Of a stretch of DNA of 64,000 bases, positions 4,222 through 33,716 are shown in pieces; within the stretch, counting starts at the first letter, position 1, and every line of letters starts with the position of its first letter. The DNA lies in the IMG/VR virus record IMGVR_UViG_3300028840_002431, positions 62,001 to 126,000 of that record; one strand, 5' to 3'. The notes beneath the pieces were generated by a model. That model was not told the DNA's origin. It did no database searches and worked only from the letters and a program-made list of their open reading frames with translations. The position numbers and the translations under genes were made by a program.

Positions 4222-4347
4222 GAGAGCGTTCGAGACGAGAAGCAGGATGTTTGCGATGGGAATCGAACCCACTACTTTCTGTGTGTAAAACAGACGCTCT
4301 ACCCTAAATGAGCTACGCTTGTATGCTTTCTCCGATTGATCGCTCTC
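4222..4347 (-). ncRNA. tRNA-chimeric RNA copy 1: D, anticodon (TAC) and T arms with the conserved stem domain replacing the acceptor stem
   Basis: Terminal stem GAGAGCG/CGCTCTC, CAATC..GCATACAAGC, TAGCTCA..GGTAGAGC, GGTTCGATTCC, ..CTGC..TCTCG. Confidence 0.85.
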
Positions 4348-24542: not shown

Positions 24543-25619
24543 ATGTCAGATCAACCGACCGTCATCGCCCTGAAAGAGCTTCTCAAGAAACACGAAGGCT
24601 GGAAGGCCCTGTTAGAAGACTCCATCTCAGAGGCCAAGAAAGAGGCCGTGAGGGGTGGGATTCGGGACGCCGACAAGTTCCCAGAAGGCTTGGAAGGCAA
24701 ACACGGTTATTATCACTACCTGAACGAGATGGTCCAGTGGTGCCCCAGAGAAGACTACGACAAGGAGTGCTTCTACATGCTGGCCAAGTTCTACTGGCTG
24801 TTAGACCAGCCGTCTGGCCGGAAGCTCCAAGAGTCGGACGAGTTCAATACCTGGATGCGTAACTTTGCCGACGACTGGGGAAGCTACCTGAACACAACCG
24901 ACTCGGCCAAGTACATCCAGACCTTTATTGACGACCCGGCCTTCAATGCATGGCAGTACATGAAGAACCCGTCGGGCTGGCTCACCTTCAACCAGTTCTT
25001 CGGCCGGGAAATCAGCCAGGGCCTACGTCCCGTGGCCGGTATGAAGAACGACGACATTATCACATCCCCGGCCGACTCCGTCTTCAAGGAGAAGTTCCAC
25101 ATCACCGACGATGACGAGATCATCATAAAGCTCACCCACCGGTACAAGATCATCGACCTGTTGGAGGACAGTCCCTTCAAGGAGGACTTCCGGGGTGGCC
25201 TCTTCATGCATTCGTTCCTGGGTCCGAACGACTACCACCGGTTCCGTGCTCCCGTGGCCGGGACCGTCCTTGAGTGCCGGGCCATCCAACAGAACGTCTA
25301 TCTGGATGTGCAAATCCGGGACGGACATTTCACCGCTCCGGACGGGGGTGGGTACGAGTTCACCCAGACCCGTGGGCTGATCATCTTCGACTCGCCCGTT
25401 GGCCTAGTGGCCGTTCTGCCGATCGGCATGGCTCAGGTCTCGTCCGTGAACATGACCGCCGTGGAAGGGGCCTATCTCCAGAAGGGTGAGGAGTTCGGCT
25501 ACTTCTTGTTTGGCGGCTCCGACATTATCATGCTCTTCCAGGCCGACAGCGGGGTCGAGATCACCTGTGCGCCGGGCATCCACTACAACTGTGGGATGTG
25601 CGTGGGAGAGGTGCTCTAG
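24543..25619 (+). CDS. psd: phosphatidylserine decarboxylase family proenzyme
   Basis: TFNQFFGR, SPAD, FLGPNDYHRFRAP, KGEEFGYFLFGGSD self-cleavage motif. Confidence 0.92.
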   Translation: MSDQPTVIALKELLKKHEGWKALLEDSISEAKKEAVRGGIRDADKFPEGLEGKHGYYHYLNEMVQWCPREDYDKECFYMLAKFYWLLDQPSGRKLQESDEFNTWMRNFADDWGSYLNTTDSAKYIQTFIDDPAFNAWQYMKNPSGWLTFNQFFGREISQGLRPVAGMKNDDIITSPADSVFKEKFHITDDDEIIIKLTHRYKIIDLLEDSPFKEDFRGGLFMHSFLGPNDYHRFRAPVAGTVLECRAIQQNVYLDVQIRDGHFTAPDGGGYEFTQTRGLIIFDSPVGLVAVLPIGMAQVSSVNMTAVEGAYLQKGEEFGYFLFGGSDIIMLFQADSGVEITCAPGIHYNCGMCVGEVL

Positions 25620-25909
25620 CGTTTCCGCCAGCCGCCGTTCGCTCTAGACCGCCAATACTGAATCCAGTTAGTGCTACAGGTCTTGCACCGGTATAGCGAA
25701 GCATCTCGTATAGGTCGTCTGTCCCGCTCCAGGAGTCCCTTACAGTCAGGGCACTCGTACCCCCCGTCTGTCTTGGTGGGCTGTTCTTCGGACCCGTACA
25801 AGCCAGCGTGGAGACGCCGACCCGGAGGGTGTTCGAGAGCCTCGAAAAGCCGGTTTGACGCTTTCGCTACAGCGTCAGGATCGCTGAGTAATTTTGGTTT
25901 GTCGGACAT
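25616..25909 (-). CDS. zinc-ribbon hypothetical protein
   Basis: CPDC..CKTC, start MSDKPK (the longer ORF overlaps tmRNA). Confidence 0.6.
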   Translation of the reverse strand: MSDKPKLLSDPDAVAKASNRLFEALEHPPGRRLHAGLYGSEEQPTKTDGGYECPDCKGLLERDRRPIRDASLYRCKTCSTNWIQYWRSRANGGWRKR

Positions 25910-26025
25910 GGGTATAATTGATTGGCCTTGAAACGCACAATCTGGCCTGATCGGGACCAGCACGGGTGCCCTGTGCATCTTCACCCTACCCGGCACCGAA
26001 TAGGGTACGTGTTCCAGGGCCAATC

Positions 26026-26405
26026 GGTGGAGTCGGCGGGAATCGAACCCGCGTCCGAAAGTGCTACTAATTACCACCTCTACGTGTGTAGCTCCATTTC
26101 GTGTCTTTGACAGGAACACCACCGGAGCGGGCAAAACCTGGGGGCGGCCTCACGGCTGCCACTTCCACCACTGGTCTAAACAACCTTGATTGAGGACGAC
26201 CAGAGACTGCGCCTCAACTGCACCGGCTAATCGTCGCCCCATCCAAAGACGCCGGATTCTCTGGCGGGACGCCCTAGGCCGCGATGGCCAGGGGTGCTGC
26301 GTTATCGTTCGCAGTTATGTTTGAGCGGCTTGATAACCCGGCCAGCCGATCAACCGGGACACGCAGTAGTAAATTCCACACCTCCGTCGAAACCTTTACG
26401 ACCCC
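26026..26405 (-). ncRNA. ssrA: tmRNA, one-piece, tag ANDNAAPLAIAA (26274..26312)
   Basis: 5' GGGGTCGTAAAGGTTTCGAC, 3' GGACGCGGGTTCGATTCCCGCCGACTCCACC, G3-U70, resume context ATAACT GCG. Confidence 0.96.
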
Positions 26406-29338: not shown

Positions 29339-29482
29339 CCCCCGCTCCCGGAGTTGAACCGGATTTGCATGTAAGAACCGCTGGATGCCTCCCGTGAAGG
29401 AGGCGAGTGAACAATCCTGAAGAGCATTTTTGCTCCAGCTTTAGCAGTGCTGGCGGGGGAACCACACCCCCAGTAAGCGGGG
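29339..29482 (-). ncRNA. tRNA-chimeric RNA copy 6: Ser(GCT)-like body with conserved domain in the variable region
   Basis: CCCCGCTT/GAGCGGGG, CAGGATTG..ACTCG CCTCC TTCACG GGAGG CATCC..CGGTTCT TACATGC. Confidence 0.82.
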
Positions 29483-29489
29483 AAAGAGA

Positions 29490-29685
29490 AGGCAGACGAC
29501 GAGTCAATGAACCCGTAGGCGGGCATCTTCATCGGGACCCCAGGAACCACACTCCGGTCTAAGACCGGCACAGGCACTCTGTGTTTCCTCTCGGGAACTC
29601 GCCCCGCACAGTGCCGTACGAGGCACGCATCCTGAGGGGATGAGATGAAACAGGACCCGAAAACGGGCATCTTCGTCGTTTGCCC
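29490..29685 (-). ncRNA. multi-branched structured RNA of unknown family
   Basis: Terminal stem GGGCAAACGACGA/TCGTCGTCTGCCT, two GAAGATGCCCG-N4-CGGGT modules, nested stems. Confidence 0.65.
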
Positions 29686-29689
29686 TCTC

Positions 29690-29824
29690 TGGCGGGGCTT
29701 TGGGGAGTCGAACCCCAAAGAACGTGTAGACGTAACAAGGTTGCGTCCCTTTGTGTCAGATGCCTCTGACAGAGATGCGAGTATCGTGCGTCGAACAGTT
29801 TGGCGGCCTCCCGCCAAAAGCCCC
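29690..29824 (-). ncRNA. tRNA-chimeric RNA copy 7: conserved domain replaces the anticodon arm
   Basis: GGGGCTT/AAGCCCC-GCCA, GACG..ACTCG..CAACC..CGTC TACACG, T arm TGGGG TTCGACT CCCCA. Confidence 0.75.
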
Positions 29825-30845: not shown

Positions 30846-30970
30846 GAACGTTCGAGTTGCTTGAGCAGATTGGTTAGCAAAATGGGATTCGAACCCATGC
30901 CTTTCCGGTTGATAGCCAGATGTCCTTCCACTGGACGATTCGCTTGTATGCTCTGACAGATTGAACGCCC
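30846..30970 (-). ncRNA. tRNA-chimeric RNA copy 10: D, anticodon (ATC) and T arms, conserved domain replaces the acceptor stem
   Basis: GGGCGTT CAATC..GAGCA TACAAGC, tRNA arms, CTGCTC..ACTCG AACGTTC. Confidence 0.87.
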
Positions 30971-32681: not shown

Positions 32682-33716
32682 CTAAGTCACCGTGGCGTTG
32701 GCGGTCACGCTCGAATCGCCGTCCATAGTTGAGACGCCATCGTAAGCGACTTCAGCGTCCGCGCCCACAGTGGAGTCACCGGCCATGGTCGGAGCATCAC
32801 CGTACTTCACGGTGGCCCCAGCCGCAACGCTGGAAGCACCAGCCATGGTGGAACTCTCTTCATCGTATATGTCGATGTCCATCGCCGTGGACGAGTCGCC
32901 AGCCATGGTCGAAATCGCGTCAAAGACTACGGACCCGTCCGCACCGACGGTGGAGTCACCGGCCATAGTCGTGTCACCACCCAACACCAGACTGATGTCA
33001 GCGCCGACGGTGGACTCGCCCGGCATATTGGCGTTGCCCTGATGGATCTCTTCTTCTTCGACCACGGCTCCGGGGACGACCTCGAATGTTACAAGCCCGC
33101 CTACCTGGACCTTACCCACAGTGCCTGTGAACTCGGTGAGTCCCAGCCCACTCAAAGTGGTCCCAACATATAACACCGTGGGCGTGAACGGGTCCCACGA
33201 GGCCACGTCTGGATACCAGACCGCAACGTTATTGTTAAATTGGAAAGCCGCCTGATCGTCAGCGTAAACAAGATGATCGGCGTCCCACGCGAACTGGATC
33301 TCGATAGGAGTTCCTTCCAGGATGGGAGGCCCCATCACACCGCTCTTGCCTACAGAGAACCCCATATTGTCCACAATGATGCCGTAAGGGACGTTGTTGG
33401 GGTCCAAAGCCACTCCTAACAGCCGGGTTGGAGGGCTGCCGTCCGTGGTGGCCACCCCCAGAAAAGCCACGGCCTGATTACCACCGGGCGGCCCAGCGGT
33501 GCAGTTGATCCGCATGGTCCCCCGTCGGCCGGTAAGCCTGTACCCTCGTGGGCCAGCTAGTGAGTGTTGACCCACACCACGGGCCATGACAGAGCCACCG
33601 GGCAACTGTTGGGCGACAACGACGCCCCCATAAGTTCCCGGTCCCCCTCTCGGGGTGACTACGCTTACATCCATGATGTAGCCAGCGGGCGAAAGGATGG
33701 AAAATCCGTCTTGCAT
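32682..33716 (-). CDS. putative structural protein, beta-rich with C-terminal ~19-aa repeats
   Basis: About six copies of (S/T)TMAGDS(T/S)VGAD. Confidence 0.7.
   Translation of the reverse strand: MQDGFSILSPAGYIMDVSVVTPRGGPGTYGGVVVAQQLPGGSVMARGVGQHSLAGPRGYRLTGRRGTMRINCTAGPPGGNQAVAFLGVATTDGSPPTRLLGVALDPNNVPYGIIVDNMGFSVGKSGVMGPPILEGTPIEIQFAWDADHLVYADDQAAFQFNNNVAVWYPDVASWDPFTPTVLYVGTTLSGLGLTEFTGTVGKVQVGGLVTFEVVPGAVVEEEEIHQGNANMPGESTVGADISLVLGGDTTMAGDSTVGADGSVVFDAISTMAGDSSTAMDIDIYDEESSTMAGASSVAAGATVKYGDAPTMAGDSTVGADAEVAYDGVSTMDGDSSVTANATVT

What the first reader, a model, noticed from the sequence alone, without database searches (positions are those of the whole stretch)
29490..29685. Separate ~195-nt multi-branched RNA with a duplicated GAAGATGCCCG-N4-CGGGT module
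Seen: a 13-bp terminal stem, inner stems TTCATC/GATGAA and CCTCAGGA/TCCTGGGG, at least three internal hairpins, and two copies of a hairpin module on opposite sides of one junction, differing only in the loops. It sits between chimeric RNA copies 6 and 7 and has no tRNA arms. Inference: a novel ncRNA with two symmetric protein-binding sites.
Basis: partly seen in the sequence, partly recalled or inferred. Interest (0 to 1): 0.6.

Follow-up and report, generated by a model that had tools for sequence, protein, structure and literature searches.

The report
Orphan structured RNA in phage tRNA array
A ~207-base, very stably folding non-coding element sits between tRNA-like genes of a 416-kb phage, but it has no relatives anywhere, is missing from the closest related phage, and its "two binding modules" are more simply the two strands of one symmetric helix, so it is a real but unvalidated curiosity.

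Summary
The sequence features are real. On the minus strand, window 29689-29483 folds at -102 kcal/mol (z = -5.8). A 17-bp terminal helix starts one base after the CCA of the upstream tRNA-like RNA and ends 3 nt before the next one. The 16-specified-base module occurs exactly twice in the 416-kb genome. No Rfam family matches.

- The two modules are complementary to each other. Pairing them into one two-fold symmetric rod is 5 kcal/mol better than two local hairpins, and several other folds lie within 7 kcal/mol.
- No homologue exists. Every other copy, from at least seven assemblies, is 100% identical. Pattern scans of viral, metagenome and genome collections, and a covariance model run on 11 related jumbo-phage records, found nothing.
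- The closest complete relative (G010, 398 kb) has the upstream neighbour at 91% identity, followed 8 nt later by tRNA-His. The RNA is therefore a lineage-specific gain.

My best reading is a young accessory RNA, co-transcribed with the tRNA array and released by tRNA end-processing, like T4 RNAC/RNAD. Its function is unknown, and a MITE-like insertion is the main rival. Interest is modest.

The parts
29483..29689 (-). Whole element (207 nt as RNA). It begins 1 nt after the CCA of the upstream tRNA-like RNA and ends with UUU directly before the acceptor stem of the downstream tRNA-like RNA.
   Evidence: Sequence; fold and z-score; neighbour boundaries.
29673..29689 (-). 5' strand of the terminal helix P1 (RNA positions 1-17; 9 bp, then an A.C mismatch, then 7 bp).
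   Evidence: Pair probabilities 0.91-1.0; inverted repeat I1.
29486..29502 (-). 3' strand of the terminal helix P1 (RNA positions 188-204).
29655..29674 (-). Module 1 (GAAGAUGCCCG-UUUU-CGGGU, RNA positions 16-35).
   Evidence: exact match; alignment with module 2.
29511..29530 (-). Module 2 (GAAGAUGCCCG-CCUA-CGGGU, RNA positions 160-179). In the minimum-energy fold it pairs with module 1: positions 23-27 with 174-178, and 31-35 with 166-170, around a 3x3 internal loop.
   Evidence: rod pair probabilities 0.98-1.0.
29644..29650 (-). 5' strand of inner helix P2 (UUUCAUC, positions 40-46). The same bases can instead pair with 29592-29582 (10 of 11 pairs).
   Evidence: P2 probability 0.82-0.97; inverted repeat I2; alternative fold at -94.6 kcal/mol.
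29527..29533 (-). 3' strand of inner helix P2 (GAUGAAG, positions 157-163).
29534..29643 (-). Branched central domain (about 110 nt). It contains an 11-bp hairpin at 29625-29600 and a 6-bp hairpin at 29568-29554.

Best explanation
The element is a young, lineage-specific non-coding RNA of a 416-kb jumbo phage.

Shown:
- It lies on the strand of the tRNA array, packed 0-3 nt from tRNA-like genes on both sides.
- It folds far better than chance.
- It matches no known family.
- It is absent from every related phage examined.

Inferred:
- It is co-transcribed with the array.
- Its 3' end is made when RNase P cuts at the 5' end of the downstream tRNA-like RNA. Its 5' end is made by 3'-end maturation of the upstream CCA-bearing tRNA-like RNA. 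The result is a ~205-nt species whose two ends are locked in a 17-bp helix. This is the way T4 RNAC and RNAD come out of the T4 tRNA cluster.
- The duplicated module is the signature of a two-fold symmetric, roughly 35-40 bp interrupted duplex that closes a ~110-nt branched domain, rather than two separate hairpins.

Most likely mode of action (speculative): a stable dsRNA-like platform recognised by a dimeric dsRNA-binding protein. One version is host RNase III trimming the rod to free the central domain. The other is sequestration of such a protein. The competing pairings of the UUCAUC segment would allow a rod/cruciform switch.

Sub-confidences: RNA-level element 0.65; rod rather than twin hairpins 0.6; any specific function 0.2 or less.
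For: - Strand and packing: all 44 tRNAs and the tmRNA are on the minus strand. The upstream unit ends in GCCA at 29690 and the downstream acceptor stem starts at 29482.
- Stability: z = -5.84.
- Strand choice: the minus-strand fold scores -101.6 kcal/mol with 10 G.U pairs; the plus strand scores -91.8 with 4.
- Rod versus cruciform: rod 5 kcal/mol better and near-certain in the ensemble. Both strands of the rod read the same 5'->3' over about 35 nt.
- Not coding: overlapping ORFs have no Pfam match. The 163-aa ORF runs through two tRNA-like genes and cannot exist in G010, where the element is missing.
- The neighbours are genuine RNAs under structural selection: the permuted tRNA-like unit shows 8 compensatory pairs against G010.
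Against: - No evidence of transcription or of ends.
- No homologue, so no covariation. All other copies are 100% identical.
- Absent from the closest complete relative G010 and from G002, G004 and G009. Any function is dispensable for this phage group.
- The plus strand folds almost as well (z = -5.3). One A.C mismatch in P1 would be a G.U pair on the plus strand.
- The phage encodes no RNase III, and no partner protein is identified.
- Several alternative folds lie within 7 kcal/mol.
Confidence: 0.4

Rival explanations
1. The RNA is a four-way junction in which each module is its own hairpin. The two identical hairpins, each with a GAAGAUG 5' flank, are twin sites for a sequence-specific RNA-binding protein, or for an endonuclease that cuts at hairpin bases and frees the centre.
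For: - The sequence identity extends into the single-stranded 5' flank (15 of 16 bases). A plain helix does not need that.
- Module 2 can extend to AUGAA/UUCAU, and module 1 to GACGAA/UUCAUC (5 of 6 pairs).
- The cruciform is only 5-7 kcal/mol above the minimum-energy fold, within the error of multiloop energy rules.
Against: - Ensemble probability of the local hairpins is 0.0025.
- The stems are only 4-5 bp, and the loops (UUUU, CCUA) are not stable tetraloop types.
- The flank identity is equally what a dyad-symmetric duplex predicts.
- No candidate protein, and no conservation.
Confidence: 0.2
2. It is a selfish DNA insertion (MITE-like or palindromic element), or a leftover of a recombination event, with no function as an RNA. 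Its RNA-like fold would simply follow from terminal inverted repeats and internal palindromes.
For: - 18-bp terminal inverted repeats, 16 of 18 complementary.
- Size of 207 bp, non-coding.
- Presence/absence difference at a syntenic site against G010, where only 8 nt separate the same neighbours.
- Orphan status.
- An 8-nt direct repeat (UGCCUUCU) at 29494-29487 and 29335-29328 brackets the adjacent tRNA-like copy 7, which hints at insertion events here.
Against: - Single copy in 416 kb.
- No copy in G010 or in any viral, metagenome or genome scan.
- No target-site duplication flanks the element itself.
- Its ends coincide exactly with RNA processing sites.
- The central 110 nt is also highly structured, beyond what terminal repeats would give.
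Confidence: 0.2
3. It is a Y-RNA-like (YrlB-type) RNA that binds a host Ro60/Rsr protein through the 5' strand of its terminal stem. It would work together with the neighbouring YrlA-like permuted tRNA-like RNA and the phage RtcB.
For: - GACGAAG at RNA positions 13-19 fits the GNCGAAN0-1G motif found near the 5' end of bacterial Y RNAs (PMC4201824).
- The ends form a long stem.
- A unit with YrlA architecture (T arm, closed acceptor, D arm) lies 150 nt upstream.
- RtcB is encoded at G000:267836-268849.
Against: - No TROVE/Ro60 gene in this phage or in 7 relatives.
- No YrlA or Y_RNA hit on the element even at E <= 10.
- The motif is 6 fixed bases, so a chance match is plausible.
- In the stable pairing register it lies inside Watson-Crick helix P1.
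- At 207 nt the element is larger than Y RNAs (80-130 nt).
Confidence: 0.05
4. It is only a processing spacer. The long symmetric stem would be an RNase III site, like rRNA processing stems, that separates array transcripts, and the excised pieces would be degraded.
For: - A rod-like interrupted duplex of about 35-40 bp with dyad symmetry, placed between RNA genes.
- From memory, not checked here: RNase III cleaves T4 species 1 RNA in vitro.
Against: - The relatives process the same neighbours with an 8-nt spacer.
- 110 nt of extra ordered structure is unnecessary for a cleavage site.
- The dyad centre is a 3x3 loop, not a regular duplex.
Confidence: 0.1

Closest known systems
Bacteriophage T4 RNAC and RNAD (species 1 and 2 stable RNAs of the T4 tRNA cluster)
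   Same: Small stable non-tRNA RNAs encoded inside a phage tRNA gene cluster on the tRNA strand. They are made from the same transcripts, and their function is still unknown (PMC3014915, PMC9697503).
   Different: No sequence relation was tested or expected. No expression data exist for the present element. It has a dyad-symmetric closing rod and is restricted to one phage lineage.
Bacterial and phage Y RNAs (YrlA/YrlB, Rfam RF02553)
   Same: The ends pair into a long stem that carries a GNCGAA-G-like motif near the 5' end. It sits next to a tRNA-mimicking RNA, and the genome encodes RtcB.
   Different: No Ro60 gene, no Rfam hit, no tRNA-like domain inside it, about twice the usual length, and the motif is buried in a regular helix.
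Bacterial MITEs that fold into long hairpins when transcribed (e.g. Correia, ERIC; from general knowledge)
   Same: About 100-300 bp, terminal inverted repeats, non-coding, presence/absence between close relatives, strong RNA fold.
   Different: Single copy, no target-site duplication, no family members anywhere searched.
Bulge-helix-bulge splicing motif (archaeal tRNA endonuclease plus RtcB ligation)
   Same: A two-fold symmetric RNA helix. In the symmetric register it has 3-nt GAU bulges on opposite strands, and RtcB is present in the genome.
   Different: The bulges are about 13 positions apart rather than the defining 4 bp. No splicing endonuclease is encoded.

Membership tests
Any Rfam family (release 15) | Score at or above the family's gathering threshold | tested here: not met
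   No match over 29483-29689 at the gathering threshold. At E <= 10 in 4.2-kb, 0.9-kb and 0.22-kb searches, the only hits inside the element are two C/D-box snoRNA models at E 3-5 and 9-14 bits.
tRNA / tRNA-like 'chimeric' neighbours | T arm (5 bp plus a UUCRANY loop) followed by a 7-nt acceptor strand; conserved AGCGGUUC motif 5' of the T arm | tested here: not met
   No T arm inside the element. ARAGORN and the Rfam tRNA model are silent there. The motif is absent (sequence).
Y RNA (YrlA/YrlB) | Encoded near a Ro60/TROVE gene on the same strand | tested here: not met
   No TROVE match in G000 or in 7 related records. The control genomes did match.
Y RNA (YrlA/YrlB) | GNCGAAN0-1G motif near the 5' end (PMC4201824) | tested here: met
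   GACGAAG at RNA positions 13-19. This is a short motif, so chance is not excluded.
Y RNA (YrlA/YrlB) | Covariance-model match to RF02553 / tRNA-like T and D arms | tested here: not met
   No YrlA hit on the element. The weak YrlA hit (19.8 bits) is on the neighbouring permuted unit.
MITE | Terminal inverted repeats | tested here: met
   18 nt, 89% complementary.
MITE | Multiple dispersed copies and flanking target-site duplication | tested here: not met
   Single copy in G000. No copies in the collections scanned. The flanks (CCA / UUUCC) are not duplicated. The host genome is unknown and so was not searched.
Bulge-helix-bulge intron motif | Two 3-nt bulges on opposite strands separated by a 4-bp helix; splicing endonuclease available | tested here: not met
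   Spacing is about 13 positions (structure). No tRNA_int_endo match.
Retron msr/msd RNA | Adjacent reverse transcriptase | tested here: not met
   No RVT_1 match in G000.
CRISPR repeat mimic / mini-array | Repeats separated by a spacer of about 30-40 nt; repeat matches a known CRISPR repeat | tested here: not met
   The modules are 144 nt apart start to start, with a structured ~124-nt segment between them. Arrays caught by the genome scan share only the bases fixed in the pattern.

The most novel reading that the evidence does not exclude
A newly acquired phage RNA whose perfectly two-fold symmetric duplex is a purpose-built ligand for a homodimeric host protein, for example a decoy for RNase III or for a dsRNA-sensing defence protein, or a self-pairing surface that lets two RNA molecules swap strands into an RNA-only dimer. 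The three competing partners of the UUCAUC segment would act as a conformational switch.
Probability: 0.1. Interest if true: 0.6.

Novelty: new variant of a known kind. Interest (0 to 1): 0.3.

Why it matters
If it is expressed, it would be another example of the unexplained small stable RNAs that phages carry inside their tRNA clusters. T4 RNAC and RNAD have been known for 50 years without a function. This one has an unusually clean two-fold symmetric helix, which makes a partner search straightforward. It also appears to be a very recent gain, so it offers a view of how structured RNAs enter phage RNA-gene arrays. As it stands, it is one sequence from one phage population, with no comparative or expression support.

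Tried and rejected
**Homologue searches, all empty apart from 100% identical copies of the same phage**
- blastn against INPHARED phages.
- Exact-module scan of IMG/VR (41 stretches, of which 40 have a single match and were not examined further; only L006 has two matches at the right spacing, and it is identical).
- Linker-pattern scan of IMG/VR (only coding Asp/Glu repeats).
- Two-module scan of JGI metagenomes.
- Two-module scan of 185,579 prokaryote genomes (unrelated tandem, REP or CRISPR-type repeats).
- Neighbour-protein look-ups (all contigs identical).

**Relatives**
- Found through the 715-aa ORF and through PSD.
- BLAST, nhmmer and covariance model R1 on their whole records, and with filters off on their tRNA arrays, found only hairpins and terminators.
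- A scan for the conserved copy-6 sequence found only G000's twin contig and G010.
- Positional analogues with long terminal stems in the relatives' arrays turned out to be coding regions or tRNA-like units.

**Specific readings rejected**
- Retron: no reverse transcriptase.
- Phage-encoded RNase III partner: none.
- Ro60: none.
- Splicing endonuclease: none.
- Coding ORFs: no Pfam match.
- Weak nhmmer similarity to a region 3' of the tmRNA: E about 2.
- C/D-box and K-turn reading of GAUGAAGAUG: E 3-5, and there are no tandem G.A pairs.

- An RNA-RNA duplex scan against the neighbouring RNAs timed out and was dropped.

Full report
**Context.** The window is bases 62001-126000 of a 416,539-bp IMG/VR virus record, G000. 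It has about 55% GC and carries 52 tRNA genes plus a tmRNA. Every RNA gene in the window is on the minus strand. The finding lies in an 899-nt stretch without ordinary tRNAs, between tRNA-Gly (30306-30233) and the first of two tRNA-His genes (29333-29260).

**What surrounds it.** Read on the minus strand, that stretch is a row of RNA-like units.
- A 152-nt tRNA-like RNA with acceptor stem, T arm and CCA (30136-29981).
- A circularly permuted tRNA-like unit (29980-29833).
- A 131-nt tRNA-like RNA ending in GCCA (29824-29690).
- The element under study (29689-29483).
- A 143-nt tRNA-like RNA (29482-29340).

The boundaries come from T arms that ARAGORN did not call and from matching 7-nt acceptor strands. 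The element therefore starts on the base after a CCA end. It stops with UUU directly before the next acceptor stem.

**Checking the observation.**
- The two modules are exact: 20 nt with 16 specified bases, at 29674-29655 and 29530-29511. That is 2 matches against 0.05 expected, and there is no third copy in the whole genome.
- The identity continues upstream, with 15 of 16 bases shared before the loop.
- The terminal inverted repeat is 18 nt and 89% complementary.
- The 206-nt RNA folds at -102 kcal/mol against -75.3 +/- 4.6 for shuffles, z = -5.84.
- The plus strand is also stable (z = -5.34), but 10 kcal/mol weaker, with 4 G.U pairs instead of 10.

Together with the orientation of all neighbours, this favours a minus-strand RNA.

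**Rod or twin hairpins.**
- Each module is a small palindrome and the two have the same stem sequence. The 5' half of module 1 is therefore complementary to the 3' half of module 2, and the reverse also holds.
- The minimum-energy fold uses exactly these long-range pairs: positions 23-27 with 174-178 and 31-35 with 166-170, around a 3x3 loop, with probabilities 0.98-1.0.
- With P1 and P2 this gives an interrupted rod of about 35-40 bp in which both strands read the same 5'->3', that is, a two-fold symmetric duplex.
- Forcing both local hairpins costs 4.9 kcal/mol (-96.7 against -101.6), and their ensemble probability is 0.0025.
- A further fold at -94.6 pairs UGUUUCAUCUC with GAGAGGAAACA (10 of 11 pairs).
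- The UUCAUC segment thus has three possible partners.

Energy rules cannot settle differences of 5-7 kcal/mol in multiloops. Even so, the simplest reading of the 'duplicated module' is one symmetric helix, not two sites.

**Known families.** No Rfam family reaches threshold. Permissive searches at three scales return nothing over the element except two C/D-box snoRNA models at E 3-5, through the GAUGAAGAUG string. I treat those as noise. Overlapping ORFs have no Pfam match.

**Homologues.**
- Every other occurrence is 100% identical over at least 1.5-3 kb: the 173-kb IMG/VR contig and six contigs read from other samples, with a seventh listed without DNA.
- Pattern scans of IMG/VR, JGI metagenomes and the prokaryote genome set gave only chance or unrelated repeats.
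- Related jumbo phages do exist. Nine records share the 715-aa ORF at 41-58% identity. Three of them carry syntenic tRNA arrays. Two closer ones share the PSD protein at 83% and 74%.
- BLAST, nhmmer and a covariance model built from the minimum-energy structure (R1) find nothing in any of them, even with filters off on the arrays.

**A lineage-specific gain.**
- The closest relative, G010, is a 398-kb record with terminal repeats, rated complete. It has the same tRNA-Gly ... tRNA-His interval.
- It holds two long tRNA-like units, the permuted unit, a ~100-aa ORF that the window lacks, and the homologue of the upstream neighbour at 91% identity. Eight nucleotides later tRNA-His begins.
- The element, the downstream tRNA-like copy 7 and the second tRNA-His are missing there.
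- The more distant G004 also goes from the permuted unit to tRNA-His without it.

The most economical history is a recent gain in this phage's lineage. By contrast, the neighbours are conserved. The permuted unit keeps its helices through 8 double changes, and the long tRNA-like units share a 16-nt motif with units in G002 and G004.

**What it most likely is.**
- Position, strand, exact abutment to RNA processing sites, fold stability and lack of coding signal make a co-transcribed, processed RNA the best reading.
- RNase P cleavage of the downstream unit and 3' maturation of the upstream unit would release it with both ends inside a 17-bp helix. These steps are inferred, not shown.
- The nearest precedent is functional rather than evolutionary: T4 RNAC and RNAD, small RNAs from the T4 tRNA region whose roles are unknown (PMC3014915, PMC9697503).
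- A symmetric duplex suggests a dimeric dsRNA-binding partner. The phage encodes no RNase III, so a partner would be a host protein. This part is speculation.

**Rivals.**
- A MITE-like insertion fits the terminal repeats, the size and the presence/absence pattern. It does not fit the single copy, the lack of a target duplication or the empty searches.
- A Y-RNA-like reading rests on one 7-nt motif (GACGAAG; PMC4201824), a YrlA-like neighbour and a phage RtcB. There is no Ro60 gene in this phage group and no model hit.
- Bulge-helix-bulge, retron, CRISPR-mimic and coding readings each fail a defining feature.

**Limits.**
- There is no covariation.
- The host is unknown.

The element is real as sequence and as a predicted fold, but nothing yet shows that it works.

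Noticed in passing
window 29980-29833 (-); L244 ~14935-14775 (-): A circularly permuted tRNA-like unit. A 9-bp terminal stem encloses a T arm, an acceptor stem closed by a loop, a D arm and an anticodon-type arm. It is conserved in G010 with 8 compensatory pairs and a different anticodon loop (CUACGGA vs CUUGAGA), and is recognisable in G004. There are weak Rfam hits to YrlA and to permuted tmRNA.
   Followed up: partly
window 30136-29981, 29824-29690, 29482-29340 (-); further T arms at 4256, 4358, 4586, 24213, 30983: A family of 130-150-nt tRNA-like RNAs: acceptor stem, D-like hairpin, a 60-90-nt insert, a T arm and often CCA. ARAGORN does not call them. A conserved motif, AGCGGUUC-YNACANGC, lies just 5' of the T arm and is shared with tandem ~165-170-nt units in distant relatives (G002 99253-99800, G004 157378-157800).
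   Followed up: partly
window 29494-29487 and 29335-29328 (-): The 8-nt direct repeat UGCCUUCU brackets tRNA-like copy 7. One copy is the 3' strand of the element's terminal helix and the other is the 5' acceptor strand of tRNA-His. The element's outer helix thus resembles a tRNA-His acceptor stem with its strands swapped. The origin is unexplained.
   Followed up: no
G000:C1:267836-268849 (+), outside the window: The phage encodes an RtcB RNA ligase (E = 1e-84), but no Ro60, RNase III, reverse transcriptase or tRNA-splicing endonuclease.
   Followed up: no
window 24543-25619 (+): A phosphatidylserine decarboxylase ORF sits inside the tRNA region (Pfam E = 3e-41). It was useful as a marker for close relatives, at 83% and 74% identity.
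   Followed up: partly
window 26026-26405 (-): A full-length tmRNA (136 bits) with tag ANDNAAPLAIAA. ARAGORN's second, 'permuted' tmRNA call at 25655-26119 has no Rfam support.
   Followed up: no
window 30871-30945 (-); relatives G002 139122-139296, G004 123254-123328: A tRNA-Asp with the unusual anticodon AUC is present in the window. The relatives carry tRNAs with UCA and UUA anticodons, which are possible stop-codon suppressors.
   Followed up: no
G009:C1:262357-261072 (-): The gap before tRNA-His in this relative encodes an EF-Tu-like GTPase. The GHVDHGKTTL signature can be read directly from the sequence.
   Followed up: no
L244 ~14760-14430 (-): G010 has a ~100-aa ORF between the permuted unit and the copy-6 homologue, where the window has only 8 nt. 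This is a second indel in the same interval.
   Followed up: no
window 32696-32981: 60-nt periodic repeats lie inside the 344-aa ORF 32682-33716, which has no Pfam or PHROG match.
   Followed up: no
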